From assembly GCA_000388065.2 (NCBI GenBank), contig KB932203.1: a stretch of DNA of 21,192 nucleotides. One strand, 5' to 3'. Each line of letters begins with the position of its first letter. Within the stretch, counting starts at the first letter, position 1. The translations under genes and the position numbers were made by a program. Below, piece by piece: positions 385 through 20,312 of the stretch. The notes under the pieces are model-generated. The model did not search any database, was not told the DNA's origin, and worked only from the letters and a program-made list of their open reading frames with translations. The DNA comes from Fonticula alba ATCC 38817. Taxonomy: Eukaryota; Protista; Nucleariida.

Positions 385-1391
385 AGAAAAAAAAAAGCAG
401 ACCGCCCTTCCGGTCCGGCGGCCACCGCATCCGGCGATTGGGGGGGGGGGGGAAGGGAGAGCCGGCGGACCCAATCCCCCCATATGCAGAGAGTCCCTTC
501 CTTCGGACCGGGAGAGGACCGCCGGGGCTCGCGGGCGAAGCCGCGCCTCGCCCCTCTCGTCTTCGCGGCCCCCCCCCCCCCCCCCGGGGGCGCGCGGAGA
601 GGGGGGCGCCCAGCCGTTCGCAATGTTGACCACCCCAGGAGCAGGGGCAGGAACAAGGGGCGAAACGGCCGGAGCTGGAGACGGTGAAACGGCCTTTTTT
701 CGCCAGGCCGACACCTCGCCCTGCTCCCCCTCCCCCCCGTGCTCCCCCCTGCTCCTCGGATGGACCTACCGTGCTCCCCCCGGCATCGGACCCGGCGCCG
801 GGGGCGGGTGTGTGCAGCATGCCAGAGGGGAAGCGTTCGCTCGCATTTTCCCGCTCACTCATTGCGCCAGGCCATGCCTCACGCTAGTCCTGTCGCGGGA
901 TCTCCGTCTTCTCGCCGGAGTCTGGGGCATGCCGGCGACCCGCGCGCTCCTGCAGCAATCGCCGGCAGCTCACCCGGCCCGGCCCGTTCCTGGGCCATCA
1001 TGGCGGCGAGACCCAGGCTGCATCCCCCCCTCCCCGCCCCTTCCACCCACCCTGCGCGGTGTTGTCCTGCACCCCCAGACGCACGGGCAGGAGGGGCAGG
1101 GACGGCGAAAAAGGATCGGCACACGCCCGTAGGTCCTCCGCCCCCCCCCCCCCCCCTGCCCCAATAGAAGGGCGACCCGGCCGCCCATCTCCGGCCGCCT
1201 CCGCGCTGATGTGTCCCGCCCCGCCCCGCCCCGCCACCGCACACAGGCGGACGAAGGGAGGAGAGACACACACGCACACGCAGAGGGAGGGACCATTCTC
1301 TTCCCACCCCTCGGCCTGTTGGCCGCGGCGAAAAAAAAAACCCAGGGTTCGAGGGGCGCTCATCACACCAAGGAATGCACTCTTATTGGGA

Positions 1392-1710
1392 TCACCTGAA
1401 ATAATGCGTGATTCTCGTGGTCCGGTGGGACTTCCCCGTCGCCGGGGCGTTCCCCTCGGTTTCGGAGATCGGCACGGCCGGGTATGGATGCTGCCGCGGC
1501 GGGGCCGGCATCGGCCGCCGGGGGGCGGCGACGCCCAGGAAGGCCGCGATGCCCGGCTGCCGTGCGGGATCCACTGGCTCCTGGGCCGAGAGCTGTTGCT
1601 GCTGCTGCTGCTGCTGCTGATCTTGGAGGAAAGGGGGTGGGAGGTCCTGATCCGAGACATGCCTGATATTGCACTCAGGGCAGAGGGTGTGCTGGTCCTG
1701 GGCGGAGAAC
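1392..1710 (-). CDS. SIVA-like exon 3 (last CxxC, poly-Q, two PIP-like motifs)
   Basis: Acceptor cccctaccAG at 1712-1711. Splicing here restores the 13-aa spacer before CPEC. The exon encodes Q9, QPGIAAFL and the terminal TTRITHYFR*. Confidence 0.8.
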
Positions 1711-1751
1711 CTGGTAGGGGCGCGAGGGAAGAGGGAGTGAGTGAGTGTGTA

Positions 1752-1828
<77 letters not shown>

Positions 1829-2194
1829 GTGTGCGCGCGCGCGAACGCGCGCCCGATGTCAGTATGGTGGATTGCCTCTGGATGGGACTGGGCAGGGAGG
1901 CCCATTGGCAGAGGTAAAAGTACCTCTGGGAAATGCACCACTTGCAGCAGGCACACAGGCAGATGGTGCACCCGGCCAGACATTCTCCACAGGTGGACTT
2001 CAGGCAGTGTGTGCAGTCGGTCAACTCCGGCTGAGGCGTGCGGCAGGCATGGCATTGTGGCGCCGGGCCCGGGGCCGGGCCATCTGTCGGTGCAGAGTGG
2101 CCAAGTGCCAGCAGAGGCGTCCGTCAGTTGATCTGGGGGTGTGGAGCAGGGCACGGTGCTCTGATAGGCCAGCTAGAGGTAGATCGCGGCAGGA

Positions 2195-2225
<31 letters not shown>

Positions 2226-2380
2226 CCCCCCTGCCCCACAAGAGACGTACTGTTCTTTCGCCGCCGATCCTGGTCGGCAAAAAATCCTCCAAGCCCTGGC
2301 GCGCCCTCAGCCGAGGGACCCTCGCAAGCAGTGGGACATAGTCCGGGCATTTCGGAGCGAGCTCGTTTCGAGGAGTGCAT
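1392..2380 (-). CDS. SIVA1: SIVA-like (apoptosis regulatory protein Siva family) Cys-rich zinc-finger protein, 3 exons (2380-2251, 2083-1924, 1710-1392), 609 nt, about 202 aa
   Basis: Spliced translation gives CHAC-x9-CTHC-x4-CGEC-x3-CTIC-x4-CKWC-x13(ISQRFSAQDQHTL)-CPEC. This is the same spacing as the human SIVA1 C-terminus recalled from memory (CSSC-x9-CGQC-x4-CGQC-x3-CWGC-x4-CTLC-x13-CTSC). Both introns are GT-AG (GTACGT..ACAG phase 1; GTACTT..CCAG phase 2) and the phases are consistent. Start context is gccATG; TGA is at 1394-1392. The symbol denotes family similarity, not proven orthology. Confidence 0.8.
1745..1843. repeat. (GT)34 microsatellite plus (GC)n; 99-bp uninterrupted alternating purine-pyrimidine tract in intron 2 of the SIVA-like gene
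   Basis: Directly visible; pure GT run at 1755-1822. Confidence 0.97.
1924..2083 (-). CDS. SIVA-like exon 2 (first five CxxC pairs)
   Basis: Acceptor ccgacAG at 2085-2084, with a CTGAC branch motif at 2127-2123. It is the only AG between the upstream in-frame TGA and the first Cys pair. The exon ends AG|GTACTT at 1923. Confidence 0.8.
2195..2221. repeat. C27 homopolymer (G27 on the transcribed strand) in intron 1 of the SIVA-like gene
   Basis: Directly visible. Confidence 0.97.
2251..2380 (-). CDS. SIVA-like exon 1 (MHSSKRARSEMPGLC...DQDRRRKN)
   Basis: ATG at 2380 in gccATG context. The exon ends at a GTACGT donor (2250) followed by a poly-G intron. It has basic KRAR and RRRK patches (possible NLS). 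There is no homology support and the frame is open further upstream, so the start is uncertain. Confidence 0.55.
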
Positions 2381-3430
2381 GGCCAAGTGAGAGCCGAAAA
2401 ATGACCGGAGGCGGCGGAACAGCCAGAGAGAGAGAGAGGAAGAGAGAGGGAGCGGGCGAGCAGCGGGGCGCAGACACAGCAGGCAAGGGCGGAAGGGGAG
2501 ACAAGGGAGGCATCGTTGTACTTCGGCGCACGGGGGAGCGCCTGTGCGCCCGGACACACGAGCCTCTTCTCGTCCCGGGGCGCGGGGGGTGCCCCATCCG
2601 CACGCGAGCAAGCGCACACACGCACACACGCCCACAGGCACATCTGGCGCCTCTGCCCAACGGACCCAGGGCCGGTTTCCGATCTCACATTCGGCCGCCG
2701 CCGCGAGCAGCGCCCTCTCGGTTAACACCAGCCCCGCCGGCAACCGAGTTAATACCGCCCCTCGTGAAGTTTCCCCGGTGCCGGATGTTTCTGATTCCCC
2801 GGCCGCGCCCCCGGGGAGCGGCGGGGGGAGCCCCTGTTCTCTCTCGCTCTCCCGGTCGCTCTCTCGCAGGAGGTCTAACAAAATGGCCAACCGCGGGTGC
2901 TCCCCCCTCGCCGCGGCCCCGGAGGAAGGCGCCCAACTGGAGTGCTGGAGTGCTGGCGCCTGGCGAGCGCCGGGCCAAGGTCTGCCACCCGCAGGTGGTT
3001 CTCCCTCTGCCCAGACTGCTGGCCTCGGTCCCCGGCCCGGTGCTTGGGCCCTCTGCCTCCCGGCGCCCGGGGAAACCCTGCCCCCTTTGTTCTTTGGCTC
3101 CCCGCGCCCCCCGCCCCCCCCCCTGGAAGAAAAGTCGCCTTCTTGCTGAGACCGGGCCAAGCACCAGACAATGGCGATGGGGGGCGGGGTGTCTAGCGTG
3201 TCACACAGCAGCAATGTTTCCCCGCCCCCTCGGCCTCCGGGCTGGTGCGCGGCCCTCAAAAGCTTCGGGCAAGTGTAGCAGGGGACGGTATCTCCCAACT
3301 CCCACCGGATCCCAGGTAATTCCTTTGACAGACTCCGCGCGCCCGGCTGGCTGTGTTTTTCGGCTCCCTCACTCGCGCAGGTGGGGCGGTCGCCCCGGCC
3401 AGCCGGTTCCCCCAGCCCCTCCCCCCCCCC

Positions 3431-3476
3431 NNNNNNNNNNNNNNNNNNNNNNNNNNNNNNNNNNNNNNNNNNNNNN
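3431..3476. other. Assembly gap, 46 N, flanked by poly-C on both sides
   Basis: C10 at 3421-3430, N46, C8 at 3477-3484. Confidence 0.99.
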
Positions 3477-3682
3477 CCCCCCCCGGCAGGCCGGCTGGCC
3501 GGCCGCCCCCCTGGCGAAGACAGTGGGGGCAAGGTCGCGAGGGGGAGCCGGCGCGGCCGCGTATAGTGGGGGCCCCCCTTCAGGAAGGCAGTGCCGCATT
3601 TGGGCAGGGCACCACCACCGCAGATAGGACTGGGGGCGATCTCCGGCCCATGCTCGCCGGGGAAGGGAAGGAGGGCGTCCCC

Positions 3683-4099: not shown

Positions 4100-4330
4100 A
4101 TGGCGGCAGTCGCGTCACAGCTCCCCCGGGATGACCTTGGCCCGATCATCGACAGCTTCTTCCTGTCGACCGTCTCTGACCTTGACGCGGCCATCATTCG
4201 CAAGCTGGCCGACATCTCCGCCGCCAACCCGACCGCTTTTGCGCCGTTCGTCGAGCATGCCCAGCAGACGCGACCGACCGTGCCGATCCCGGCCCACGAG
4301 CAAGCCGACCTGAATGAGGCAGCGCGTCAG
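4100..4330 (+). CDS. BEACH gene exon 1 (putative start)
   Basis: acagccATGGCG start context, high-GC3 codons, CAG|GTGCGC donor. No homology anchor. Confidence 0.65.
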
Positions 4331-7302
4331 GTGCGCCGCCCGGTTTTCCCGCCCCCCCCCGCCAAGGGCCTCCCCTCGACTTACCCCTGCCTTTTGCCTC
4401 CCTTCGCGCTCTTTTCGCCCCGTCGTCATCCCTCTTCACCATGCTCCTCCTCGTCTGGCAGATCCTCGCATGCACCCTGCACATGCTCTCCCACGCTCTG
4501 GTCCGGGCGCAGCTCTTGCAGGCCCTGCCGACCGATTGCTCTCAGTGGATGGTGTCCTCCTTCCAGCTGCTCCTTCGATCGGCCCTACGTCTGTCGCCGT
4601 GGATCTCGGCCAGTGTGCGTCCCAGCCCCCTTTCCTGCCCGCCATGTCCGATTTTGCGCGCACGCACACGCGGACGCGCACACAGGTCTCTCTTTTTCTC
4701 TCCCCCCCCCCCCCTCCCCCACACGCAGACATAGACACCACCGCTTACGGACACCGACTGACTCATGCGACCGCAGCTTCTCGAGCTTCTCTGGACGTCA
4801 CTTTGTGCCTGTGTCCGGCCGCTGTCGATCGCCACGACGTCCGCCGCGACGAATCGCTTCCCCGCGCTCAAGCTGCTGATCGATTCGGCCACGCCCTATC
4901 TGCCGGGCCGGGACAGCGATCCGCGCTTCTTTGGCCGGGCCATCATCCCCTGCGTGCCGGTGACCGCCCTGGCCGACATGCTCGGCCCCCTGCTGGAGTT
5001 TTGGCAGTCTCTCTGCCTCCTGCCAGTCGCGGTGACTCTCGCCACCCGGCGTTCCTCCTTCCTGGGTGTTCTCTGTGCGTCTTGTTTGCCCCGGCCCCCC
5101 CCTCCCCCCCTCTCCTTGGCTCTCCTTGCCTGTCTTTCTGTCTCCCTGCCTCGCTCCCTCTTCCTCTGTGTTTCCCTTCCGCCGTAGGTCCCCGGCTGAC
5201 ACTTCCCACGCTCAGACGCTGTTTCGGACCTGGTTGTCTGCGGGTATTTCGGCGTGCCTGCCGGGCCGGCCGACTCATCTCCCTTGTCAATCCGGTCGCC
5301 AGCGCCCACGCCCAAGGATGCGAAGGATCTGGTATTGGCCCTGCGGTCGGTTTCGGCCCGGCTGGAACGTCTTACCGCTCGACACCGCCGGTGCCTGGAG
5401 CCGGCCGACCCGGGGGTCTGTCCGGCCCCCTCTCGTTGCATTGCTCTCGTAGATGTCTCGCCAATCGTGCGTCCCGTAGCGACCGTGTCCCTCTTCTTTT
5501 GTCCTCCCTCCCTCTCCCTCTCTCCTTTGCCCCTGACGCCTTTGCTCACAACCTTTCGTCTGTTCTTTCTATCTCCCTCCCTCCCTCCCTCTCTCCCTCG
5601 CCCGCCAATCGCCAACTAATCCCTCTGCTGTCTCGGGGTCCCAATCTCCGCCCCCCTCTCCAATCCAGCCCGACTCCGTGTCTCGGCTGGTGCTCGGCAT
5701 GCGCACGGTCTTCGGCGGACTAAGCTCAAGTGGGGTGCAATTCTCTCCCTCAGCCCCGGCGACCGCATCGGCTGGCAGCGCCTCCATCCCCGGATCCCCC
5801 GGCTCCCCGGGGCATGGCCGGTCGTCATCCAACAACACCGGGCCCGGGGCCCTCGAGCGTCCCTCTCTTCCCCAGAACCACCCCTGGCTGTCGCTGTATA
5901 TGCTCTGGCCGAGCGCCCCGGCGCCATTGGTCCCGGCGGCCGGCGGCCCGGCCGTCCCGAGCTACTTCTCCCTGGATGGCATGCACTCGGGCTTGGTCCT
6001 GCCGGCCATCGCCTGGCCGGAGCGCGCCAAGGGCTATCTTTTCGCCGCCTGGGTGTGGCTGGAGCCCTGCCCCGTGGGCCCGGTGGCCATCCCCCGGGTC
6101 GAGCGCCCGGCCGAAGCCCCGGGCTCCCCGGGCCAGCAGCCGGCCTCGGCAGCACACCCACAGCAGCCGGCCTCGGAACGCTCCCCCGGCAAGACTTCCA
6201 CCTCGTCCTCCTTCTTGGGCGGCATGCTGGCCTCGGTCACTCGGGCCACGGGGCTCGCCTCGCCGGAGCCCTCTCTGCCCGGGTCGCCGAAGCTCGGGGC
6301 ATCGGGCCGCTCGGCGGTGCCGCCGCCAGCGCCCTTCACTCCGCCCCGCGCGCCGACACCTCCCGCTCGGCAGTACCTCTACAGGTGCGCGACTCTGCCA
6401 CTTCTCGCCGCTTCTCGCCCTCTTCGCTGCCTCCCTCTGGCCTCGCTCGCTCGCTCGCTCGCTCACTCATGGGACTGACTCGGTCCTTGGTGGATAGCTT
6501 TGCCGCTCGGGACACCTCGCCCACGGTTTTCGGGGCCGGTGTCCATGCCTTCTTTGAGCGGTACCCGAATATCGAGGCGCTGGACCCGTCGATTGCCGTG
6601 GCTCAGGTGGATCACTACCGCCTGGTGGTCGAGTCGACTGGCCTCTCGCCCGCGCTGACCAAGGACGAGCGCCGACGCTACGAGCGCCAGGATCGCCCGA
6701 TCCCCCGGAACCTGGTCGACTCGACGGCCTTTGTGCGTTGTCCACTCGCCTGCCCCTTGTCCCCCCCCCCCCCCCCCCGCCCTCGCCCTTCACCCCTTGC
6801 CCCTTCGTCCTGCCTCCTGTTTGTTCTGTCTGGGATTCGGCGTGCTGACATGTGCCCCTGCCCCGCAACAGGACTTTCCCTTCTGCCCCGGGCGCTGGTA
6901 CCATGTGGCTGTGTCCCACGCGCCGGAGACCGTGTCCAGCAGCTGGTGGTGGCCCTTCGGCTCGTCGTCCGGCACGGCATCCACCGCCGAGACCGGGCTC
7001 CCCGGGCAGGTGGCGCTGTACATCGATGGGTGTCTGGTTCTCTCGTCGCCGGACTCCCTGCCCCCGAGTGCTGAGCCGCATGCCGGCAAGGGTACCAAGA
7101 AGCCGGCCGACCCGGCCCCCGGGGCGACTGACGATCCGGCGTATGCCCGGTCGCGGCCCCTGCGCTTCCCCTTCCTGAATGAGGTACGCACATGGCCGGC
7201 CGTGGACTTTCCTCCCCTCGGTCCTGCCCCTTCACAGCATGCCCTTTCCTCCCCATGTCCCGCGCTCACATGCATGTACTCGCCGCTCTCCCTTCCACCA
7301 CT

Positions 7303-7364
<62 letters not shown>

Positions 7365-10300
7365 TGTCATGCGCAGTCTCCCCTTCCTCTGTCGACCATC
7401 GGCTGTCGGCCGAAGCAAAAGTATGGCTGGAGCATGGAGGCCAACCCGGTGTTTGATTGTCTGCGCGGGCGCATCGGCGCGGTGCACATGTTCGCCGGGG
7501 CGCCGCCCGTGCCGGACTCGTCGCCCACCCAGCGGCGCTTCCGGCCGCACCTGCGCCGCCGAGCCCCCACCATGTCGGGTGGCTTCTCCTCCGACGGGCC
7601 TGATGTCACAGCCTGCGAGCTGGTCCCCGGGACCATTCCGCACATTCTCTTCGGTCTGGGGCCGGCCTACACCGGGGACCTGGTGCACCCCTTCCTGGCG
7701 GCCAACATGGACCTCGCCGGGATCGGCCTCTCGGACCTCGGTTCGGCCGGCCTGCTGCCGGTGGTCGGCTCGGCCGAAGGCCTGCCGGCTGCGGCGGCGC
7801 GCTTTCCCCAGCCCGGGCCCGAGGTGCCCAGCCAGCAGGAGCTTTCGCTAGCGTGCGTGCTGTCGTCCCTCGGTGCACCTTTCTGTCTGTCCGCTGGCCC
7901 TCCTCCCGGGGACGCTCTCTTTCTTCTCTTTTTTTTTTGGTGTCTGACCCGACTCCTCCTTGCCGGTCCTCCCGCCGGGATGGACTCCACGCTTTTCTCC
8001 GCACCCGCCACCGGGCAGCCGCTCCCTCGGGTCCGACTTGCGCATCGGCATGTCGCTGATGTTCGCATACCACCCGCGCGCGGCCGAGCCCCTGGTGCAG
8101 GCGGTCCCGGCCGGGGCCGACCTGGACACCTGCCTCGGGCAGATGGACTCCCCCGTGGGCCGGGTGTTTGCCTTCTGGCAGTGCCGGTCGGTGGCCCCCC
8201 CTGGCTGCGAGCGCATCTTCGCCATCGATGGGCTGGCCCTCTTCCCCGGCGGCGGGTCGGAGGTCAATCCGCAGGCCCTTTTGGCGGCGGCCGGAGCGGT
8301 GCTCCTATTGGCTCCGGGCTCGAAGCCGGTCCGCCGGCCGGGGCTGGTTGCTGCCTCGACCGGGGCCCTCAGCCCGCCGGTCTTCTGTTCCTCGGCCACC
8401 AGCCTGCCGAGTAGCCTCTGCGCGGCGGCCCTGCAGGCATGGACCGCCGGGCTGTATGGGCCCCTGAATCCCTGGTCGCTGGCCGGTGTCCTGTCGCAGG
8501 TGAGCGCGGTCGGGGCCCTGCGCGCGGCGACGGCCGGCCACTCGGCCGAGACGGTCCTCCGCCGGGTGGACCTGGCGGCCACCACCCTGCAAGTGATGCT
8601 GGCTCTGCTTGCCTCGCGCCCGGCCATGCTGCTGGAGGCCCTACAGGGGGGCTTCTTCCCGCTGCTGGCCCACATCATGGAGCACCGGCTGTCCGGGAAG
8701 GCGGCTCTGTCGGGGCCCGGGGATCCCGGCTCCGGGAGTGCCTCGTCACCGGGTGCCGGTGGCGGCTCCGATGGCAGCGGCCCCGGGGCCGGCCCCGGCG
8801 GGGCTGCCTCCTCTTCGGCCCTCAGCTTGGAGGTGGCCTCGGTCATCGGGGCCGAGCTGCCGGTGGGCTTCTCCGCCGGGTCGGCACACCCGGCCCTGCG
8901 GGCCTTCCTGCGCGTGGCGCAATACCGCTTCCTGCTGCTGAACTGGGGCATTTGGATTGGGGCCCCGGTGTCGGTTCAGCGGTGGGTCCTGTCGGACATC
9001 GCGGCGGCCGCCGGCGGGGGGCCCGACGCCGCGGCCTGGCTCCGGGGGACCCTCGGCGTGGCCAGCCTCTTTGACATCCTCTCGGACCATCTGTTCTTCT
9101 GGGACACCGGCCACTCGGTGATCGGCACTGCCACCGGGGCGGATGAGGGGGCCGGCGATGTGGGCCCCGAGGCCGGGGCATCGGCCGGCCCGTCCTCCCC
9201 GGGCACGGGGCAGTTGCTCACCTGCCACGATGTGCGCGAGCTCCGTGCCTACATCATCTTCCTGCTGAATCGCATGGTGACGGCCAAGCAGCCGCTGGAG
9301 CTGCGCGATCTCCACCGGGTGTTGATGTTCATCAGCAACAGCACCTCGTCCATGGTGAATGCCGTGGCCTCGACGGCCGAGTCGGTTTTGTCCGGCCAGG
9401 CGGCGGCCCAGCTGCGGGGGGTCCCCTCGCGGCTGACCCGGCGCCAGGCCGCCGTGGCCGACGCCCTGGTGGATGTGCTGCCGGTGCTGCTGAATTGGCT
9501 GGCCGACCAGCCGACCGCCATCGCGGTGGATGGCTTCGTGCAGAAGGACGGCCTGACGGCCCTCATGCCGGCCCTGTGGCTGGACAATGAGATCATCCAT
9601 GTGACCATCGTCAAGATCATCGGGGTGCTCCTGCGGCGGACGGCTCGGCGCCGGGATGCCAACAGCCGGCACCTGCTGGCCGAGCTCAATGACCGGGCCT
9701 TCCCGTACATGGCCGCGTACTTTGCCCAGCGGCCGATGTCGCACCTGGTATATCGGTCGCTGTTTGAGCTGGCCATCGGCCAGGCCCATTCGTCTCTGGG
9801 CCATGCGGATTCCCGGTCCTCGGTGCGTGTGGTCCAGCCCGCGGTGTTGGAGCTCCTGCTGGTGGCCCTGTCGAGTTCCTTCCAGGCACACCAGGACCCG
9901 GATCTGGCTGCCTTGGGGGTCGGGCCGGGCGGGCTGGCGGTCGATCCCGGCCCCGGGGCCGGGACCATGTCCCGGAGTGGCTCCTTCGCCCGGTCGCCCT
10001 CCATGCATGGGCAAATTTCGGTCACCGAGCAATTCCTCCACGACCTGCGGCTCTTGCTGGTGGGCAACCCGGCGGACATTGTGCCGGTGCTGCTGAATGT
10101 CGAATCGTGGTATGTGTACCTGGTGCGCTTCCAGCTGAGCCGGCCCTTCGTGACGGAGACCCTGGGCGACAGCCTGAAGCGGTCGCTGCGCGCGTCGCGG
10201 GATTTCCCCCTGCCCGACATCCCGGCCCTGAAGTTGGCCCTTCCACGATCGACCGGATCGGTCGGGCCGGTTCTCCTGCCGCTGCGTGTGCGCCATTCGC

Positions 10301-13300
10301 TCACGGTGGCGGTGCCGGAAGCCGGGGGGCACTTTTCCCTCTGGGCCCCGGACGACCTTTCCCCGGCCATCGATCATGCCGGGGACGATGCCCCGGAGGC
10401 CGAGCTGATGGCCGCCTCGGCTGAGGGGTCCGGCAGGGAGGGGGCCCCGGCCGGCCAGCCGGAGCCCCCGGCCGGAGGGCGCTTGCGTCTTCGAACCCCC
10501 GGGCAGCTTTGGCTCGTGGCCACCGGGCCGCGGTTGCACTTTGTCCTGGCCGACTGCCCGGCGGTGCGGACCTTCTGCGACCCGCGGTCCGGGTTCCCCA
10601 GTGACCCGGTGGATCTGGCTGGCCGACAGCTGGTCGGCACCCTGGGCAGTGCCCTGGCCAGCGGGGCCGGTCTCGGGTCGCCCTTCAATGCGGGCCCCTC
10701 GGTGTCGAGCAGCTACCACACGCACCACTCCCCGGGGTCGGCCTTGTCCACGGCCGGGTCGCTGGGGCCCGGGAATGTGGCCGGCCTCGGTGGCGGGACC
10801 AGTGCCGTCTCCAGTGCCGGGGCCTCGCCCGCCCTGGGCACCTACCACCCGACGCACAGTTCGGCATCCTTGGCGTCGGCGGCTTCGCGGACGCCGTATG
10901 CCGGGTCGACGGCCGCCGCCGCGGCGGCGGCCAGTGCCCTGTCCACGGCCCCCGGTGCGTGGGCCCGGCTCGAGCCGCTCTTCGCCTACCTCAGCGGGGC
11001 CGATGACATTGAGGAAGCCGCGGCGGCCGTGGCCCTGGAATACCTGCTGCCGGTGAGCGCCCCCCACCGGGACCCGCATAGCCGGGCGGTCGGGGAGCTG
11101 GATGCGCCGATGTCGCCGATGACCGGGGATTCCGGCTCTCCCGGCAGCCGGGATGCCAGCCTGGAGGACCTGGCCACGCCGCCGAGCCCGCTGAACCCGG
11201 ATCAGCCCCTGCCCGGGGAGGCCGATGGCGCCGGGGCGGAAGCCGATCCCCGGCTCCCGGCCGAGGCGGCCTCGGCCGGCTTCGGCCGGCCCTGCTGGCC
11301 GATGGTCGTGCGGAAGCGCCTTTTCGCCGAGTTGCTGACCTTCGCCCGGATGACGGTGACCGAGTGGCAGCGGCTCGAGGGGCCGCGGCCGACCGGCAGC
11401 ACGATCAGCGCGCGGGACTTGCTCCAAACGGCGGAGGCCATTTTGCGGGTGGCCCTGCTGGCGGCGGCCGATGTGACCGGGCTCAACCGGTCGGACGGCG
11501 TGTCCGACTGGGATTTGATTCCGCTGGCCACGGCCGAGGACATGCCCATGCTGAATGACCTGCAGTTTGTGCTGGAGTTCTTTTTGAATGTGGCAGCCGT
11601 GGCGGCTGGCGCCCTGGCCGGGACCTTCTTCCCCTCGACCTGGATGGTGCCGGTCGTGGGCCAGCTCCTGGATGCCGAGGTGGAGGAGCAGCTCCTGGAT
11701 GCCAGCGTGCTGGTGACCCTGGCCGTGATCAATGTCCGCGTGCAGGCCCAAATCGCCGACAGCCTGCGCATCCTCGGTGCCGGCCGCCGGCCGTTGGAGG
11801 ACCTGGTGGCCGAGCAGCCGGTGGTCGGGGACCTGCTGGCCGGGCTGGCCCTGACATCGGAGGATGTGGCGGCCTTGACCCGGGTGGCTTCGTCGGCTGC
11901 CCGGCCGGCGGCCTCCGGCTCCGGTGGCCATGGCCCGGTGCCGCCCGGGCAGCCGGCGGTCGCCATGACGCCGACCACCGCCACCGGGGACCTGTTGAGC
12001 CCCCTGTCCCTGATGGGGGCCGGGCTGGAGGGGGATGATGGGCCGGGGCCCGATGGCTCGGGCTCCGGGGTGGGGAACGCCATGCCGGGCGGGCCGCAGC
12101 ATCCGCGCGCGCAGGCCCTCGGCCAGGCCCCCCGCCGGGGGAGCAGCTTCTCGCAGGGCACCCCCCTGGGAGCCCCATCGACCACGGCGGTGGCCGCGGC
12201 GGCCGTCGCCGCGGCCGAGGTGTCCCAGTCCCTGTCGTCGGATTTGTTCCCGGTGCCGGCGGAACGCCGGGGGTCCAATCCCCCGGTCCCTGGCGGCAGT
12301 GGCCCAGGGAGCCCGCGGCCGCCCCACCGGCGCCCCATGCCGGCCGGGCTGTCCGTGGCGGACCCCACCTCGGTGGCCGGGCTGAGCTCCCTGAACCTGG
12401 CGGATCCCACCTACCGGCGGCTGTTGGCCGTGGTGTACTGCCTGACCCGGTTGGCCCTGGCGGCCCTCGGGTATGATGTGGTGGAAGTGCTGCAGGAAAT
12501 GCCGGCCAGCTTGAAGAACACCACGGGGCTGTCGGCCGCGGCGCTGGCCCGGCTGGCGCACTCGTCGATGCACACCCGGTCCACCGGGCCCGGGGGCCCG
12601 AACACACCGCCGGCCTTGCAGCCGGCCTTCTCGGCCCGGGCCCCGGTGTCGCCGCATGCCGAGCGCTTTGCCGCCGCGGTGCGGTCCTTCATCGTCGAGC
12701 GCTTCAGCGTGCTGGTGTACCTGAGCATGGCGCACCTGCACCAGACCCTGCACGCGCATGCCAGCCTGCGGCCGGACAGCTCGGTCCAGGCCTTCCTCGA
12801 ATACCTGATGGACTCGTCGTGGATCTACTTCGCGCGGTACTGCCTGGTGGGGGCCTTCCGCGAGACGCTCCTTTCCCTGGCCCAGGCGCACTTGTTGATC
12901 CCGCGGCCGAATGACCCGGCGCCGCTGCAGCTGTCGCTGCCGGAGTTCACGTATGCCTCGCCGACGCACGGGCACCTGCGCCGGGCCCGGGCCGCCGGGA
13001 CCACGGCCGCCACGGCCGCCGCGGCGATTGGCCCCGGCGTCGCGGCCCTCGGCGGGGCCCCGGCCCCCTCGCCGGTGCTGCTGACCCCCTCCATCATTGA
13101 GGCGGTGCGGCTGTACTCGCACGACCTGCGCGCCACCTCCTACTACTACCATGATGCGGACTACTTCCGGTGCCAGATTCGCAGCGAGTCGGCCGCCTCG
13201 GTGCGCGTGGCCGCGGCCCGGACCCTGAGGGACATCCTCCGCGAGCAGGACATCTCCGAGGGTCCCTGGCGCCGAGCCGGGGCGGCCTTCTCCGGGTCCC

Positions 13301-16300
13301 CGGCGCCGGCCCTCCTGTCCGGGCCACTGCTGGCGTCACTGCCTCCGCAGAGCCTGGTTCGCATGCAGTGGGCCGGGTCCGAGGGGGCCCCGGCGGATGG
13401 GTCTTCGGCCGGGGCCTTTGCCCGGGGCCGGCACCACTCGTCGTCCTCCCCCTCGGCTGTCGCCGCCGCCGCCGCCGCCGCCGCCGCCGTTGGCACGGCC
13501 GTCGCCTCCGCCACCGCCACCACCACCGGGGATGTCTTCCGCGTGGTGGATTGCCTCCGGTGCGGGGGTGTGGTGGACCCACGCCGGGACTCGGCCGTCG
13601 GCTACCTGCTGCCAGATCGCCATGTTTCCTACCGGTCGCTGGGGCTCGGGACCGGTGGCCCGGTGGCCCGGGCCGCCGGCGTGTCCTCCGGGCCAGGGCC
13701 GCTGTTCGATCTGACCGCGGCCTCCTTCAGCCCGGCCTTGTCGCTGGCCGGGCGGTTGTTCTGCGAATGTCGCGGCGTCATCAGCTCCCTGCGCCCGTTG
13801 CAGGACCCGTCGGTCTTCAGCCTGCTGCCTCGGCAGCCGACCTACTGGCGGTTGGCCCTGACCGAGGATGCCTTCCGCCGGCGGCGCCTGCTGACCCGGC
13901 ACTATGGCGGCAGTTCGCACGAGGGGGCCTCCATTGCCACGTCCTCGGCCAGCCTGTATGTGCGCACGCGTTTGGCGGCCATCGCGCCGGCCGGCGATGC
14001 CGAGCAGCCGGACCAGGGCCTGGGCCTTGGGGCCGGCGCCGCGGACACGGGGCCCGCCTCGAGCCCGGCCTCCCCGCGGCTGGAGGCCGTCCTCCGGAAG
14101 CTGGCCGCCGATGCGGAGGAAGTCGACACGGCCGGCGGGCCGCACTCGGCCGAGCTGGAGGAGCTTATTGACGACATTTCCGGCTCGCTGTCGGCCGAGG
14201 GGCTGGCCTCCAACCGGCAGGCGCGGCTGCCCCCCGGGTCGCACACCCTCAAGGCGGAGCTCGTCCGGCCGGGGTATGTCCTGGCCGGCGAGCTGACCAT
14301 TGTCCCGGGGGTTCCGCTGTCGGGACATGCGCCGGGGGCCGGGCCGCAGGGATCGACCCTGGCCCCGGGCACCCCGGGCACCGGGCCGGAGCATGCCGAG
14401 CATGCCGACGCCGAGGTCAGCTCCGGGCATATCATCAGCCCGGCCCTGTCGGCCGGGCGCCAGGGCGGCCCGGGCCGGCGCTGGACCACGGCCCTCTTCT
14501 ACTTCCGGGCCTTCTACTACCTGGAGGCGCCCGGGCGCCGGGGTGCCGGTCGTGGGGCCGGGAGCGGGTCGCGCGGGTCGGCCGCCGCCGAGGCGGCCGT
14601 CGCCCTGACCGACGTGCCGATGAAGCACCGGCTTCGGGTGTGGACGGCGGATGCCATTTCCAGCATCCAGCCCCGGCGGTATCTCCTGTGCCAAACGGCG
14701 CTGGAGGTGTTCCTGGCCAGCCGGCGGTCGGTGTTCTTCAACTTCCCGATCCACGAGTCGCTGGCCGACACGCGGAAAACCCGCGACCGGGCCCTGGGCC
14801 TGCTGAAGCAGATCTCCCCGGCCACCGAAAGCCTGGCCAGTGCCCTGTCAACCACCCTGACCCGGGCCTTTGATGCCTTCTCCTCGGTGGGGTCCTCCTT
14901 GACGCACGCCCCGGGCGGGGCCCCGGTGCTGGATGTGCTGGAGCGCAATGCCCTGGCCGAGGTGACGCAGCAATGGTCCGCCGGGCGTCTGAGCAACTTC
15001 GATTACCTGATGCACTTGAACATGCTGGCCGGCCGGACCTACAGCGATCTCAACCAGTGGCCGGTCTTCCCCTGGGTGCTGGCCAATTACGAAACGTCGG
15101 AGCTGGACCTGACCGACCCGGCCAACTACCGGGACTTGTCCCGGCCCATGGGCGCGTTGAATCCCTCCCGGCTGGCCTACTTCCGGGCGCGCTTCGAACA
15201 GTGGGACAGCGACGACCTGGAGCCCTTCCTCTATGGGTCGCACTATTCCAACATGGGGACCGTGCTTTTCTTCCTCCTCCGGGTGGAGCCCTTCACCTCG
15301 CACTTCCTGCACTTCCAGGGCGACCGGTTCGACCATCCCGGCCGGTCGTTCTTCTCCCTGGCCCAGGCCTGGAGCAACGCCCTCAATTCCACCTCCGACT
15401 TGAAGGAGCTCATCCCGGAGATGTTCTACCTGCCGGAGCTCTTCCGCAACACCGGGCGCTTCGACCTGGGAGTCCTGCTGCCGGAGGGGGTCGACGATTT
15501 GGATTGCTACTCGAAGGGGCATGCACGGCGTGAGGCGGCTCGGGCGGCGGCGGCCGCCGCGGCGGCCGCGACCACCGCGTGCGCGTGCGAGCCGGCGGAC
15601 ATGTGCTCTTGCGAGCCGGCTCCATGCCCGGCCCCGCCGGGCCCCCCGGCTCCGGCATACGTCCTGGACGATGTGGAGCTGCCCCCCTGGGCCCATGGCA
15701 GCCCGGAGCAGTTCATCCGCATCCACCGGGCCGCCCTCGAGTCGGACATCGTGTCGAGCCAGCTGCACCTGTGGATTGATCTGATCTTCGGCTTCAAGCA
15801 GCGTGGCGCGGAGGCCGTGAAGGCCAACAATGGTGCGTGCTTCATGCTCCCCTTCGCCGGCCGGAGGGGGGGGGGGGCTCCTCTCCATAGCCGGGCCGAT
15901 TATGAGGCTGCCCCTGGCTGTGCACATTCTGCGCTCGCGCGCGCGCGCGCCCCCTACTCGCTTGATTTGCCTTTCGCCACTTGCCTTCTCCCCTGGTCTC
16001 CTCCATTCCTCACGCACACTCTCCATCCCCCTCCTCCCCCTTAGTTTTCCACTCGCTCACCTACGAGGGGAACTACGACCCGGGGCGCTTGCGCGAGAAG
16101 GACCCCCTCCTGCTGAAGGCGACACAGGACCAGGTGGCCACCTTCGGCCAGACGCCGCGCCAGCTCTTCTTCGCGGCGCACCCGCAGCGAGCCTTCGTCC
16201 CCTCGCTCGGGTGCACTCTTCCTGCCGCCGGGGGCGACAGGTCGCGTTTCCGCCGGTCGACCATGGTGGCCCCGAGTGCGGTGCATACGCGGACCCTGCC

Positions 16301-19300
16301 GGGGGCCGATGCACCGGGGCCCGATGTGCCGGGCTCGCCGAGCGGCTGCCCGCCCTCGCCGCCGCCGCCGCCGCCGCAGTCACAGCCGGGCAGCCCGGTG
16401 GTGCCGGGCCCGCCGTCGACGCCTCTGCGGGCGGACCTTCCGGAGCCCAGCTCGCCCGATGGCGATAGTGCCATTGCCCCGCCGGCCGGGTCGCCGGGTC
16501 TCCTCCAGACCGGGGCTGCCAATGCCAATGCCGGTCCGACGCCGCTGGCCCCGGGGCCGGCCTCGCCGCCTGGCGCCCGGCGGTCACTGGTGGCCCCGAT
16601 TTGGACCGACGAGCAGTTGCACTTCTCCCTCGGGTCGATTGACGTGTCGCCCGGGGTGCCGATCATCTTTGTCAGTGATTTGGACTTCGTCGGGCATGAT
16701 GACGAGAACCCGGCGGCCTGGCTGGCTGGCCAGCAGCCGACCGGGGGGTCCAGCGCCTCGGGCGCCGGGTCGGACGCCGGCCCGGCCGCCGGGGCCGGGC
16801 CCGGGTCGGGATCGTCCCTCGGCGGTGGTGGCGGGAGTCTTGGCGCCTCGGGCTCCGGCGGCGGTGGCAGCGCCTCGGCCAGCGCCGGCGGCGCCCCGGA
16901 CAAGGTGACCGCCTGGGGCCGGCTGCTGACCGTCAGCGCCGACCAGTCATACGGCTTGCATCGGTGGTCCGTGCGCCAGGCCGGCTTCGCGGCGCAGCTC
17001 CCCCAAACCCCGGTCGGCGATCCGGCGGCCGGTGGCGCGCGCGCCTCCGCCCTGCAGCAGCAGCAGCAGCACTGGCAGCACCTGCAGGGCCAGCAGCAGC
17101 AGCAGCAGCAGCAGTCTCTCGCAAATGCCGGCGCCGAGGGTGGCATCTCGCTCGGCGTGGAGGACGAGCCGGCCGGCCGAAACAACTTGCCGGACGTGCC
17201 GGCCTCCGCCTCGATGTCAGTCATCCCGTTGCCCTTCTATCTGGATGTGGATCCGTTGCTGTTCTCCCTCGCACCGGGGGACTTTGCGGCGGCGGCCGCG
17301 GCCGCGCCTCCCGCAGCCACGACCACCACCTTCTCGGCGGGGGGCCCGGCCACGACCGACCTCCGGCCTCGGTCGGCGTCGCGCCTGGCCTCGCCCGCCA
17401 CCACGGCCCCGACCCCGAGCCAGCTGTCGCTGATGTCCACCAACCTGAATCTCCTGGCCCTGCACACCGGGGCCGGGGACCTGGTCGGGGAGGCGGCCCC
17501 GCGAACCGGGGCCGCGGCCCTCCGCTCACGACAGACCCCCCGCTCGGCACCGAACTTCCGCCGGTACCTGCACCCGCACTTGGATGCGGAGCTCTTTGCC
17601 ACGCGCGCCCAGTGTCACAGCCTGTCTGGCGCGTGGGCCGGCACTCCGGCCATCCGGGCAGCCACGACCGCCGGGGCTGGGCGCGCCCGGCCGGCGGGTG
17701 GCTTCTTCGGCTTCGAGGCCGAGGACCTCCGTCAGGCGGCCGTGGCGAGCAGCGCCCCCGGGCAGCAGCCGGGCCTGGCCGGGGGCGCCGAGACCGCGGG
17801 CCCGGCCGACTCGCCGGCGGTCGTGGCCCTCCGGCGGTCGGCCGGCCTGCCGACCCTCAGCGCGGCGGTCGGGTCCGCCTGGCTGGCCCGGTCACGGCCC
17901 CTGGCCACCGGGTGGCTCTTTGTCTTCGACCCATCTCGCAGTGTGGTGGCCAGTGCCGGGCACTGGGATGGCTCGGTTCGCGTGACCCAGCTGCCGGATG
18001 GGTTCAGCGTGACCAGCCAGCTGCTCGGGGAGCTGGCCTCCCAGGCCACCAGCACCCTCGGCCTGGGGACCATCCTGTCGCTGACCGGGCGGACATTGCA
18101 AATCCTGCGGCTGGATGACACGGTCACGTCGCTGAGTTGGACCCGCTGCGGCCGGTCGCTGCTGGTGGGCACCCGCAGCGGGCAGTTGTCGCTGTGGGGC
18201 GTGCTCGGCGGGGCGGGGACCATCGGCGATGAGCGCCGCGGGTCCGGTGCCGGCGGGGCCGCCAGCTCCGTGGTGGCCGGGGCCTCGCTGGTGGGGGCCG
18301 GCTTGTCGGCCGGCGTGCAGAGCCTCGTCGGGGCCGGGTCCAGTGCCGGGTCCAGCAAGGCCGGGCACCTGTCCGCCTCGGCCGCCCGGGAGAATGACAT
18401 CTCCGTCGGACCGGTGGGCTTGTCGGGCCCGGGCCCGCGGGCCCCTGTGGCCAATTCCCTGGATTTGGCGCAGTTCCAGCCGGCCGAGCTGGGCTCCGTG
18501 GTCAGTGCCTTCGCCCAGGCCAGCCGGGTGTGGGGCACGGCCGAGGCGCGCAATCTCGGTGTCCTGGCCGGGCTGCCGGGCATCTCCTTCAGCTCGGCCT
18601 CCGGCCGGCAGATGATGTGCAGCCTCGACGGGGCGGCCATCTCCCCGGCCGAGCTGGCAGCCCTGCAGCAACTGAGCTCCGCCGCCGGGCAGGCGCTCCT
18701 CCGGCACAGCCTGCAGCGCGGGCGCCTGGACGACCGGGCCGTCCGGGCCCGCCTCGAGGGTCACGATTCGGCCGTCCGGGCGTCCTGCTACCTGGACCAC
18801 CCGTCGGAGGTATGCTTTTTTGTCGCTTCTTTTCCCCCACCTCCCCCCCCCCCCTCCTCCGCCCCCCGCACATGTGCGGTCCTCGGTTGCCTGTTTAGAA
18901 GCTGACATAACAAAAAACCCGTAATCCAAACACCACATAAGCAAAGACCAAAAACTCGCCGGCCGCCCTCTTTCTCCCCGGGTGAGGGGATGTGCGCGCC
19001 ATGACTGCGCCTGTTCTGACCGACCTGCTCAATCCCCCCCCCCCCCCCCCCCCCCCCCCTCCCCCTGCCTTGGTACAGCCCGGCATCGTTGTCTCCGCCT
19101 CCGCCTCCGGGGTCCTGCTGCACCTGGCCACGTCCGGGCGCTTTGTGCGGGCCATCTACGAGGCGGCGCTGCTGGCCCGGGGGCTTGCCCCCTCGGCCGT
19201 GGCCCCGGTGCGCGATGGGTGCTTCGTTGTCTTGTACACCCCCCTGTGGCTGCATCCGATGCCGGTCAATGGCGATGCCGTGGATCACGGGCTCTTCAAC

Positions 19301-20312
19301 CACATCGCCGATGTGGCGTCGATCTTCGAATCGCGCCTGGTCCTGTACACGGTCAATGGCACGCGCCTGCACCAGCTCTCCCTTGCCGGGGAGTTCTCCC
19401 CCTCCCTGTCGACGGTCCAGCACCAGGGGGCCCTGTTCATCGGGTCCCCGACGGCCGGCCTGGCCGGGCGCGCGTCGGCCGATCCGGTGGCCGCGGCCGC
19501 CGAGCATGCGCCCCTCCTGCGCGCCTCGCCCTGCGGGTCATTCGTTCTGCTGGCCCTGAAGACACACCTGCACGTGTATCGCGTGGATGCCAACGCCCTG
19601 GTACGCACATATGCTGCACATGTCTGGCTGGTGCCCTTTTTTTTTTTCTTTTTCCCCTTTCCTTCATTCTTTTTTTTGGGGGGGGGGGCGGCGGGGGGGG
19701 GGGGGGCCGCGGGCCCTTTTTTGGGTTTAGAGAGGCCCCCCCCCCCCCCCCCGGGTTTTTTTTCGGCCCTTTTTTCTCTTGCCCCGCGATGCCCACGCGC
19801 GCCGCGCGCCCCCCTCCCTTGGATTCCCACGTGCTGACCGGCCCGCGCGATGTTGCCCGGAAATTTGATCCCACAAAATGCAGACGCTGGTCCACCGGTC
19901 TGGCTCGGTGCCAGCCCCGATCACGGCCATCGGCCTGGTAACCACGCCGAACCATCGGCTGCACCTGCACCTGCCACCGCCGGTGCCGGGGGTCCACATC
20001 CCGGCCAGTGCCGGGTCCCGGAGCGGCCGCGGCGAGTCGCCCCATTCCCCTGGCCCTGGGTCCCTGGCACACGAGGCCTCGGCCGAGGCCCTGCAAACCG
20101 TGGTCGACACCCTCTGCCGGCGGTGCACGGTCCCGACGCCGGGCTTCGCCGGGCATCACTTTGTGCCGGCCGGCTCGCAGTCGTGCTCGCACGCGCACGC
20201 GGCCGGTACGGCCTGCGCCTCGGTCACGTATGCCTTGCTTGGCCTGGCCAATGGCGTGCTCCAGGTCAATGCCCTGGACTTTGCCTTCTGGCGCTCGCAG
20301 AGCGACTACTAA
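4100..20312 (+). CDS. Giant BEACH-domain protein of neurobeachin/LRBA/NBEAL type (ConA-like, DUF4704/ARM, PH, BEACH, WD40); 12 exons, 14,202 nt, about 4,733 aa
   Basis: Exons: 4100-4330, 4462-4614, 4777-5074, 5216-5466, 5669-6384, 6498-6732, 6872-7183, 7377-7852, 8019-15832, 16045-18809, 19079-19600, 19884-20312. All introns are GT-AG with consistent phases (0,0,1,0,2,0,0,2,1,0,0). Family motifs: YFSLDG..LPAIAWP..GYLFAAW and RWYHVAVSH (ConA-like); LLLNWGIWIGAP..VQ and ELRAYIIFLL (DUF4704); RRYLLCQTALEVF..RRSVFFNF (PH); [72 protein letters not shown] (BEACH); GHWDGSVRV and LEGHDSAV (WD40). Confidence 0.93.
4462..4614 (+). CDS. BEACH gene exon 2 (helical, ARM-like)
   Basis: tggcAG acceptor at 4461, GTGCGT donor at 4615, phase 0/0. 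Translates ILACTLHMLSHALVRAQLLQAL... Confidence 0.65.
4777..5074 (+). CDS. BEACH gene exon 3
   Basis: CTGAC branch at 4758-4762 and ccgcAG acceptor at 4776. GTGCGT donor at 5075 (phase 1); an alternative phase-1 donor exists at 5066. Confidence 0.6.
5216..5466 (+). CDS. BEACH gene exon 4
   Basis: CTGAC branch at 5196-5200, ctcAG acceptor at 5215 (phase 1), GTGCGT donor at 5467 (phase 0). Confidence 0.6.
5669..6384 (+). CDS. BEACH gene exon 5 (start of ConA-like domain)
   Basis: CTAAT branch at 5616-5620, ccAG acceptor at 5668. Encodes YFSLDGMHSGLVLPAIAWPERAKGYLFAAWVWLE and QYLY. AG|GTGCGC donor at 6385. Confidence 0.85.
6498..6732 (+). CDS. BEACH gene exon 6 (ConA-like)
   Basis: CTGAC at 6475-6479, TAG acceptor at 6497. 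Splicing gives QYLYSF..GVHAFF, similar to NBEAL-type LYSFFT..FEAFF. GTGCGT donor at 6733. Confidence 0.85.
6872..7183 (+). CDS. BEACH gene exon 7 (ConA-like)
   Basis: CTGAC at 6845-6849, aacAG acceptor at 6871. Encodes DFPFCPGRWYHVAVSH, VALYIDG and LRFPFLNE. GTACGC donor at 7184. Confidence 0.88.
7304..7363 (+). repeat. (CCG)20 trinucleotide repeat in BEACH intron 7
   Basis: Directly visible; ends 13 nt before the end of the intron (AG at 7375-7376). Confidence 0.97.
7377..7852 (+). CDS. BEACH gene exon 8 (end of ConA-like region)
   Basis: gcgcAG acceptor at 7376. Encodes STIGC, CLRGRIGAVHMF and LFGLGPAY. GTGCGT donor at 7853 (phase 2). Confidence 0.8.
8019..15832 (+). CDS. BEACH gene exon 9, 7,814 nt (DUF4704/ARM, DUF1088/4800-like motif, PH, most of BEACH)
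   Basis: Body of the 2,694-aa ORF. The acceptor at 8018 is the first AG after the CTGAC at 7944-7948. The exon ends ANN-G|GTGCGT at 15833; splicing restores the BEACH motif [10 protein letters not shown]. Confidence 0.93.
16045..18809 (+). CDS. BEACH gene exon 10, 2,765 nt (BEACH end and first WD40 blades)
   Basis: ttAG acceptor at 16044. Encodes [46 protein letters not shown] and LEGHDSAV. GAG|GTATGC donor at 18810. Confidence 0.9.
19034..19059 (+). repeat. C26 homopolymer between branch point and acceptor of BEACH intron 10
   Basis: Directly visible. Confidence 0.96.
19079..19600 (+). CDS. BEACH gene exon 11 (WD40)
   Basis: CTGAC at 19016-19020, tacAG acceptor at 19078. Encodes GIVVSASASGVLLHLATSGRFVR and LVLYTVNG. 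GTACGC donor at 19601. Confidence 0.88.
19884..20312 (+). CDS. BEACH gene exon 12 (terminal WD40 blade, TAA stop)
   Basis: CTGAC at 19834-19838, tgcAG acceptor at 19883. Encodes PAPITAIGL and YALLGLANGVLQV. TAA at 20310-20312. Confidence 0.82.
   Translation, partial: TLVHRSGSVPAPITAIGLVTTPNHRLHLHLPPPVPGVHIPASAGSRSGRGESPHSPGPGSLAHEASAEALQTVVDTLCRRCTVPTPGFAGHHFVPAGSQSCSHAHAAGTACASVTYALLGLANGVLQVNALDFAFWRSQSDY

What the first reader, a model, noticed from the sequence alone, without database searches (positions are those of the whole stretch)
1392..1559. Two PIP-box-like motifs in the tail of the SIVA-like protein: a candidate PCNA adaptor
Seen: QPGIAAFL (1559-1536) fits Q-x-x-I-x-x-F-hydrophobic. 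The extreme C-terminal TTRITHYFR* (1421-1392) fits x-x-x-I-x-x-Y-F plus a basic residue, lacking only the Q. Established: PIP boxes (QxxI/L/MxxFF/Y) bind PCNA and often sit at disordered C-termini (POLD3/Pol32, Pol eta). Human SIVA1 has been reported to bind PCNA through a PIP-like motif and to recruit RAD18 for PCNA mono-ubiquitination. Here the motifs lie C-terminal to the zinc finger in a poly-Q/Pro disordered tail that human SIVA1 lacks (it ends just after the last CxxC). Inference: an independently arranged, bivalent PCNA-binding SIVA. This would suggest that the ancestral role of SIVA is at the replication fork (damage tolerance) rather than death-receptor apoptosis.
Basis: partly seen in the sequence, partly recalled or inferred. 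Interest (0 to 1): 0.78.

Follow-up and report, generated by a model that had tools for sequence, protein, structure and literature searches.

The report
PIP-like motifs in Fonticula SIVA-type protein
A small zinc-finger protein of the amoeba Fonticula alba, distantly like animal SIVA, has a long species-specific floppy tail with two short matches to the motif that docks proteins onto the DNA clamp PCNA, but no relatives exist to test them, so PCNA binding stays an untested guess.

Summary
QPGIAAFL (1559-1536) and TTRITHYFR-stop (1421-1392) are in the annotated 202-aa protein H696_02198 of Fonticula alba. Spliced RNA contigs confirm both introns and carry the first motif. They stop at 1478, so the C-terminus and its stop codon have no RNA support.

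The zinc finger is SIVA-type: a gapless alignment matches all 12 Cys. The Pfam score is below threshold, and the N-terminal two thirds of the SIVA profile is missing. That missing part holds the human RAD18-binding and PIP-like segments.

The 90-aa tail has no detectable relative in any search I ran, so conservation cannot be tested.

- **Internal motif:** it is weak. It has Leu at position 8 and nearly neutral flanks, and such matches occur about 0.8 times per 1000 aa in the neighbouring gene.
- **C-terminal motif:** I-x-x-Y-F is the credible candidate. It has the strict hydrophobic core, net basic flanks and an extreme C-terminal position, but no Gln.
- **Third core:** LGGFF (residues 30-34) sits 20 aa before the finger. 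The mammalian SIVA motif sits 22 aa before it.

The bivalent PCNA adaptor and the "ancestral fork role" are not supported by independent evidence. I put PCNA binding by any motif at about 0.2. The scan noted this same stretch before (s1-065592).

The parts
2251..2380 (-). Exon 1 (residues 1-43 plus the first base of codon 44). It contains the NLS-like KRAR (2368-2357) and a third PIP-like core APGLGGFF (2302-2279).
   Evidence: The annotated protein P0001 matches the spliced translation. An RNA contig joint at 2083/2251 confirms the exon end.
2084..2250 (-). Intron 1, 167 nt, GTACGT...ACAG, with a poly-G tract.
   Evidence: RNA contigs of all 4 runs skip 167 nt, with CT..AC on the plus strand. 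Sequence.
1924..2083 (-). Exon 2: most of the SIVA-type zinc finger (Cys 54 to Cys 93).
   Evidence: Pfam Siva matches profile positions 106-170. The alignment to mammalian SIVA is gapless. RNA contigs cover it.
1711..1923 (-). Intron 2, 213 nt, GTACTT...ACCAG, with a (CA)n microsatellite.
   Evidence: RNA contigs of all 4 runs skip 213 nt. Sequence.
1392..1710 (-). Exon 3: the last CxxC of the finger (Cys 107 and 110, ending at 1671), then the 90-aa Q/P/A-rich tail and the TGA stop (1394-1392).
   Evidence: Spliced translation. RNA contigs cover 1708-1478 only. Codon-position GC in the tail is 0.76/0.51/0.83, like the neighbouring BEACH ORF at 0.71/0.57/0.89 and unlike the 3' flank at 0.70/0.74/0.64.
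1593..1619 (-). Run of nine Gln (residues 128-136), (CAG/CAA)n.
   Evidence: It is the only predicted helix in the tail.
1536..1559 (-). Motif 1, QPGIAAFL (residues 148-155). It has Q1, I4 and F7, but Leu at position 8. Flank charge is -1 on the N side and +2 on the C side.
   Evidence: It lies inside the RNA contigs.
1392..1421 (-). Motif 2, TTRITHYFR plus stop (residues 194-202). It has I4, Y7 and F8 but no Gln. Flank charge is +2 N side, +1 in the core, +1 C side. It sits at the extreme C-terminus.
   Evidence: No RNA contig covers it.

Best explanation
H696_02198 is a small Fonticula alba protein built from three parts. The first is a 53-residue N-terminal stretch with a basic KRAR patch. 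The second is a SIVA-type 12-cysteine zinc finger (residues 54-110). The third is a 90-residue disordered tail, rich in Gln, Pro and Ala, found only in this lineage. The tail is most likely one of the low-complexity extensions common in this 70% GC genome. The internal QPGIAAFL is most likely a chance match and does not bind PCNA. The protein is therefore not shown to be a bivalent PCNA adaptor. The one part of the tail that looks like a docking peptide is the basic, aromatic C-terminal end (GKSHRTTRITHYFR). If any motif works, it is this one, inserting I197, Y200 and F201 into a hydrophobic pocket of a partner. Shown: the gene structure, transcription of the first motif, the SIVA-type Cys spacing, and the absence of detectable relatives. 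Inferred: disorder, chance origin of the matches, and any binding.
For: The gene model and RNA joints are. The finger matches Pfam Siva at E 2e-4 over profile positions 106-170. It aligns without gaps to mammalian SIVA, with all 12 Cys matched (hhalign E 1e-4, BLASTP E 1e-3). All ten best language-model hits are Siva clusters, score 0.94. The tail is an orphan. A word search gave only His-Thr repeat junk. A search restricted to the finger found only the protein itself. Exhaustive phmmer found only repeat artefacts. A metagenome scan found nothing, and the Atlas feature search of the tail gave no usable hit. Matches of the motif-1 type occur 0.8 times per 1000 aa in the neighbouring gene, and wide cores 6 times per 1000 aa. 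The same 202 residues also match SH3 class I, MIP-like, RIR-like and NLS-like patterns, which shows how easily such short matches arise. The neighbouring BEACH protein is full of Ala/Gly/Ser/Pro inserts. According to PMC6881253, flank charge favours only motif 2.
Against: Two strict [ILM]xx[FY][FY] cores in a protein with only 8 Phe or Tyr residues is rare in shuffles (3e-4), and one at the very C-terminus is rarer still at 5e-4. The last 15 residues switch from a Pro/Ala/Gln composition to a basic and aromatic one, as real docking motifs do. Human SIVA1 is a reported PCNA binder, which raises the prior. Confirmed PCNA motifs often lack Gln or one aromatic residue and can sit at the very C-terminus.
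Confidence: 0.6

Rival explanations
1. Only the C-terminal peptide (residues 194-202) is a true non-canonical PIP-type motif. It tethers the zinc-finger protein to PCNA, in the manner of the C-terminal motifs of POLD3/Pol32 or of archaeal PCNA partners. Motif 1 plays no part.
For: It has the strict anchor residues I4, Y7 and F8, which define the broad PIP class (PMC6881253). Net charge is positive across flanks and core at +4, plus two His, and positive flanks raise affinity. It sits at the extreme C-terminus of a predicted coil. It is rare in shuffles at 5e-4. A KRAR basic patch is compatible with nuclear import. Human SIVA1 binds PCNA.
Against: There is no Gln at position 1, and Q to A cost 50-fold affinity in p21. 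Only one residue follows the aromatic pair, so no C-terminal flank can contact the interdomain loop of PCNA. There are no homologues to show constraint. This part of the mRNA has no RNA support. A handful of such C-termini are expected by chance per proteome (inference).
Confidence: 0.17
2. One reading: both tail motifs bind PCNA, making a bivalent SIVA adaptor that brings RAD18 to the clamp. This would reflect an ancestral replication-fork role of SIVA.
For: Both motifs fall within the spread of confirmed PCNA motifs. Tandem disordered PCNA motifs are known, for example Spd1 (PMC10939359, listed). An earlier unchecked note reports a RAD18 gene in this genome.
Against: Motif 1 has Leu at position 8 and nearly neutral flanks, and it occurs at chance-level frequency. 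The human RAD18-binding segment (residues 40-58) and the PIP-like segment (83-96) lie in the part of the SIVA profile that this protein does not match. Tail motifs at non-homologous positions cannot show ancestry. There are no homologues.
Confidence: 0.05
3. The C-terminal or N-terminal aromatic pairs dock to a different repair or replication hub. Candidates are the MLH1 site that binds MIP boxes (THYF resembles the S-[HRK]-[YF]-F core) and the REV1 C-terminal domain that binds RIR motifs (FFADQD is FF followed by four non-Pro residues). An unrelated partner is also possible.
For: The pattern matches are. From my own knowledge, not tested here: PIP, MIP and RIR motifs overlap in sequence and are partly interchangeable.
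Against: These are pattern matches only, recalled from memory. There is no conservation, and an acidic context surrounds the N-terminal FF.
Confidence: 0.08
4. The annotated C-terminus is wrong. Transcripts use the GT at 1394 as a donor, or end earlier, so TTRITHYFR-stop is not the real end of the protein.
For: RNA contigs of both samples stop at 1478-1482, and no RNA run holds 1330-1480. CAG|GTGATC is a possible donor.
Against: The contigs end without loose ends or a poly(A) run, at a depth of about 5, which fits low coverage. Both confirmed donors are GTAC, not GTGA. GC3 stays at 0.86 in codons 161-202 and drops after the stop. No coding-like periodicity appears in the 1.39 kb down to the assembly gap.
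Confidence: 0.07

Closest known systems
Animal SIVA1 (Pfam PF05458; human SIVA1 as PCNA-RAD18 bridge, PMC4068132)
   Same: It has a 12-Cys zinc-finger module with identical spacing over 62 gapless columns. It is a small protein. A short hydrophobic motif lies about 20 residues upstream of the first Cys: LGGFF here at 20 aa, QMLIGPDG in mammals at 22 aa.
   Different: The Pfam score is 21.3 bits, below the 26.2 threshold. Profile positions 1-105 have no match, so there is no detectable RAD18-binding helix or homologous PIP-like segment. Mammalian SIVA ends 5 residues after the last Cys, whereas this protein continues for 92 residues after it.
C-terminal PIP-type motifs of POLD3/Pol32 and of archaeal PCNA partners (PMC6881253)
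   Same: [quoted passage not shown]
   Different: Position 1 is Thr, not Gln. Only one residue follows the aromatic pair. There is no binding evidence and no conservation.
Tandem disordered PCNA-binding motifs (S. pombe Spd1, PMC10939359)
   Different: In Spd1 binding was measured, and here nothing was. Motif 1 here has chance-level frequency and neutral flanks. I saw only that paper's abstract.

Membership tests
SIVA (Pfam PF05458) | C-terminal cysteine-rich zinc-finger module with fixed Cys spacing | tested here: met
   Pfam aligns residues 48-112 to profile positions 106-170 of 173. hhalign to 12 mammalian SIVA sequences gives 62 gapless columns at E 1.1e-4. BLASTP to P0120 gives 67 gapless columns with all 12 Cys aligned. 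All ten best Atlas feature hits are Siva.
SIVA (Pfam PF05458) | Whole-protein score above the curated Pfam threshold | tested here: not met
   The score is 21.3 bits against a cut-off of 26.2 (E 2.4e-4). hhalign probability is only 56%.
SIVA (Pfam PF05458) | N-terminal two thirds of the family profile. In human SIVA1 this holds the RAD18-binding residues 40-58 and the PIP-like residues 83-96. | tested here: not met
   Profile positions 1-105 have no match. Residues 1-60 alone hit nothing. Human segment positions are from PMC4068132.
SIVA (Pfam PF05458) | Protein ends a few residues after the last CxxC | tested here: not met
   Eleven of 12 mammalian sequences end 5 residues after the last Cys. 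P0001 continues for 92 residues after Cys 110.
PIP-box (Q-x-x-[ILMV]-x-x-[FY]-[FY]) | Gln at position 1 | tested here: inconclusive
   Motif 1 has Q148. Motif 2 has T194. 34% of confirmed motifs lack Gln.
PIP-box (Q-x-x-[ILMV]-x-x-[FY]-[FY]) | Aliphatic residue at position 4 and aromatic residues at positions 7 and 8 | tested here: inconclusive
   Motif 2 meets all three with I197, Y200 and F201. Motif 1 has I151 and F154 but Leu 155 at position 8. No canonical full match exists in the protein.
PIP-box (Q-x-x-[ILMV]-x-x-[FY]-[FY]) | Lies in a disordered region with net positive flanks | tested here: inconclusive
   The tail is predicted coil, but from a low-confidence single-sequence model with mean pLDDT 48. 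Flank plus core charge is +4 for motif 2, +1 for motif 1 and -1 for the N-terminal core.
PIP-box (Q-x-x-[ILMV]-x-x-[FY]-[FY]) | Conserved in orthologues | tested here: inconclusive
   No orthologue was found by word search, exhaustive phmmer or metagenome scan, so there is nothing to compare.
PIP-box (Q-x-x-[ILMV]-x-x-[FY]-[FY]) | Binds the hydrophobic pocket of PCNA, and anchor mutations abolish binding | not testable with these tools
   No complex prediction or binding assay is available here. The structure tool takes single chains of session sequences only.

The most novel reading that the evidence does not exclude
A non-animal SIVA-type zinc-finger protein is tethered to PCNA by a C-terminal I-x-x-Y-F peptide. 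The LGGFF core 20 residues before the finger might contribute too; it sits where mammalian SIVA carries its PIP-like segment. That would make clamp binding, not death-receptor signalling, the shared and older activity of the SIVA finger across Opisthokonta.
Probability: 0.12. Interest if true: 0.6.

Novelty: new variant of a known kind. Interest (0 to 1): 0.3.

Why it matters
SIVA is known mainly as an animal apoptosis and p53-pathway factor. A single study makes it a bridge between PCNA and RAD18. A SIVA-type finger in Fonticula, a relative of fungi without death receptors, already suggests a more basic cellular role for the module. If its tail really docked on PCNA, that would support the DNA-damage-tolerance role and give a simple system to test it. 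As it stands the evidence is only a pattern match in an orphan disordered tail. The value is a cheap, well-defined peptide-binding experiment, not a result.

Tried and rejected
1. A word-indexed homologue search with the unspliced frame returned only His-Thr repeat artefacts from the translated (CA)n intron. It did yield the annotated protein P0001.
2. The same search restricted to the finger, exhaustive phmmer of residues 44-116 against 1.84 billion representatives and a metagenome scan found no relatives. The three phmmer hits are tandem-repeat translations.
3. PDB sequence search gave only weak RING/LIM-like chance hits. NCBIfam gave nothing.
4. The single-sequence AlphaFold2 model has pLDDT 48 and is too poor for fold searches, so I ran none.
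5. The Atlas search of the tail gave no usable hit.
6. RNA support for the C-terminus failed. Contigs stop at 1478, and a second run search for 1330-1480 found only DNA holders.
7. I wanted a position-specific matrix from the 83 curated PCNA motifs, but the table body is not held in the paper text.
8. Literature searches for non-animal SIVA found nothing useful.
Only the database sequences it returned, all from non-human mammals, were used. The length window of that search excluded full-length SIVA, so diversity is low (Neff 1.7).

The window is Fonticula alba, not human.

Full report
**What is there.** The window is scaffold KB932203.1 of Fonticula alba (GCA_000388065.2). It has about 70% GC. 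On the minus strand lies the annotated gene H696_02198, a "hypothetical protein" (P0001, 202 aa). Its exons are 2380-2251, 2083-1924 and 1710-1392. The introns are 167 and 213 nt, begin GTACGT and GTACTT, and end in AG. The spliced translation equals P0001.

**RNA support.** Contigs from four small 2012 runs (two samples, one study) skip exactly these two introns. The runs are therefore RNA, and the gene is transcribed and spliced as annotated. The contigs extend from 2507 to 1478-1482. They cover motif 1, but not the last 29 codons, the stop or the possible donor at 1395/1394. A second run search with 1330-1480 found only DNA holders.

**The observation.** QPGIAAFL is residues 148-155 (1559-1536). 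TTRITHYFR-stop is residues 194-202 (1421-1392). The protein has no canonical Q-x-x-[ILM]-x-x-[FY][FY]. QPGIAAFL is the one Q-led relaxed match.

**Is it more than chance?** I ran 200,000 shuffles that keep the protein's composition.
- The Q-led relaxed pattern appears in 1.5% of shuffles.
- A strict core within three residues of the end appears in 0.05%.
- Two strict cores appear in 0.03%.

In the adjacent BEACH reading frames (3,668 aa of the same genome) the rates per 1000 aa are 0.8 (Q-led relaxed), 0.27 (strict) and 6 (wide core). Motif 1 is thus a 1-in-6 event for a protein of this size. The C-terminal core is rare for one protein. But the pattern was chosen after seeing it, and over several thousand proteins a handful of such C-termini are expected by chance (my inference). 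The same 202 residues also match SH3 class I (RPMPAPP), MIP-like (THYF), RIR-like (FFADQD) and NLS-like (KRAR) patterns. This shows how cheap short-motif matches are here.

**Is the protein a SIVA?**
- Pfam Siva matches residues 48-112 to profile positions 106-170 of 173. The E-value is 2.4e-4 and the score 21.3 bits, below the curated 26.2.
- hhalign of that alignment against P0001 gives 62 gapless columns, E 1.1e-4, probability 56%.
- BLASTP to P0120 gives 67 gapless columns, in which the 12 Cys at positions 54, 57, 67, 70, 75, 78, 82, 85, 90, 93, 107 and 110 all align.
- The ten best language-model hits in the ESM Atlas are all Siva clusters (score 0.94, 203 of 256 shared features). The structural hit (TM 0.73) does not discriminate, because unrelated zinc-ribbon clusters score alike.

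So the finger is SIVA-type, but the protein is not a full SIVA. Nothing matches profile positions 1-105. In human SIVA1 that part holds the RAD18-binding residues 40-58 and the divergent PIP-like segment 83-96, with Q85 and I88 (PMC4068132). Mammalian SIVA ends five residues after the last Cys.

**The tail.**
- Residues 113-202 are rich in Gln, Pro and Ala and include a run of nine Gln. They are predicted coil apart from the Gln run, though the model confidence is low.
- Codon-position GC is 0.76/0.51/0.83. In the last 42 codons it is 0.60/0.64/0.86. This resembles the neighbouring coding frame (0.71/0.57/0.89) and differs from the 3' flank (0.70/0.74/0.64). That fits translation in this frame up to the TGA.
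- No coding-like periodicity follows in the 1.39 kb before an assembly gap.
- The tail and the finger have no detectable relative. The searches were a word search, exhaustive phmmer over 1.84 billion representatives, a metagenome scan and Atlas features.

That is not evidence against function, but it leaves the claim resting on pattern matches alone.

**How the motifs compare with known PCNA motifs.** Prestel et al. (PMC6881253) curated 83 confirmed motifs. Of these, 34% lack Gln at position 1, 12% lack the hydrophobic residue at position 4, 43% lack one aromatic and 10% lack both. The class is best defined by positions 4, 7 and 8. Most motifs lie in disordered regions, some at the very C-terminus (POLD3, and all archaeal cases). 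[quoted passage not shown] Q to A in p21 costs 50-fold.

By these criteria:

| Motif | Anchors | Charge | Assessment |
|---|---|---|---|
| Motif 2 (194-201) | I4, Y7, F8; no Gln | N flank +2, core +1, C flank +1, plus two His | Best candidate, but almost no C-terminal flank |
| Motif 1 (148-155) | Q1, I4, F7; Leu at 8 | N flank -1, C flank +2 | Weak |
| N-terminal APGLGGFF (27-34) | Anchors present, Gly-rich | N flank -2, C flank +1 | Weak |

One curiosity concerns the N-terminal core. Its last residue lies 20 residues before the first finger Cys. The mammalian QMLIGPDG lies 22 residues before it (P0136). This is a lead only.

**Reading.**
- *Most likely (about 0.6).* The tail is a lineage-specific disordered extension. 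Motif 1 is a chance match, and the protein is not a bivalent PCNA adaptor.
- *C-terminal peptide as a real PIP-type tether (about 0.17).* It is a credible single candidate for a docking motif.
- *Other partners (about 0.08).* These include an MLH1-type MIP pocket or a REV1-type RIR pocket. I recall these patterns from memory.
- *A wrong C-terminus (about 0.07).*

The evolutionary inference does not follow even if binding were shown. Motifs in a lineage-specific tail, at positions not homologous to the human segment, would indicate convergence. An earlier unchecked note reports a RAD18 gene in this genome (s1-066165). I could not test it.

**Novelty and score.** The SIVA-type finger outside animals is the more solid point, and it is the subject of the sister note s1-066210. 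The PIP-like motifs are a testable but weakly founded hypothesis. Interest is 0.3. If true it would be a new variant of a known kind: a SIVA-type finger with a C-terminal PIP-type tail.

Noticed in passing
window 2279-2302 (minus), residues 27-34: A third PIP-like core, APGLGGFF, is not in the finding. It ends 20 residues before the first zinc-finger Cys. In mammalian SIVA the published PIP-like QMLIGPDG ends 22 residues before the first Cys (P0136). The flanks here are acidic and the core is Gly-rich.
   Followed up: partly
L001 8380-11240, directly before window base 1: A run of N of about 2.9 kb (an assembly gap) lies between this gene's 3' flank and the next annotated gene, a 1793-aa protein kinase. 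A missing gene or exon there cannot be excluded.
   Followed up: partly
window 1330-1480: This stretch is held at 0.8 and 0.5 of sampled words by 2025 DNA runs labelled as another organism (X9, X10), and at 0.4 by a sediment metagenome (X11). Fonticula-like DNA may therefore occur in other samples, and strain differences in the tail could be read there.
   Followed up: no
window about 4100-21192 (plus): A giant BEACH-domain gene is annotated here (4733 aa; DUF4704, PH_BEACH, Beach). It has very long Ala/Gly/Ser/Pro low-complexity inserts. One reading frame stays open for 2694 codons.
   Followed up: partly
window 1745-1850 and 2185-2237 (minus-strand introns); about 3430-3480: A (CA)n microsatellite of about 100 nt lies in intron 2 and a poly-G tract of about 30 nt in intron 1. 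Translated, the microsatellite gives His-Thr repeats that flooded the first protein search. A 46-base run of N lies upstream of the gene.
   Followed up: yes
window 2357-2368 (minus), residues 5-8; residues 162-168: There is an NLS-like KRAR near the N-terminus and an SH3 class I-like RPMPAPP in the tail. Both are pattern matches only.
   Followed up: no
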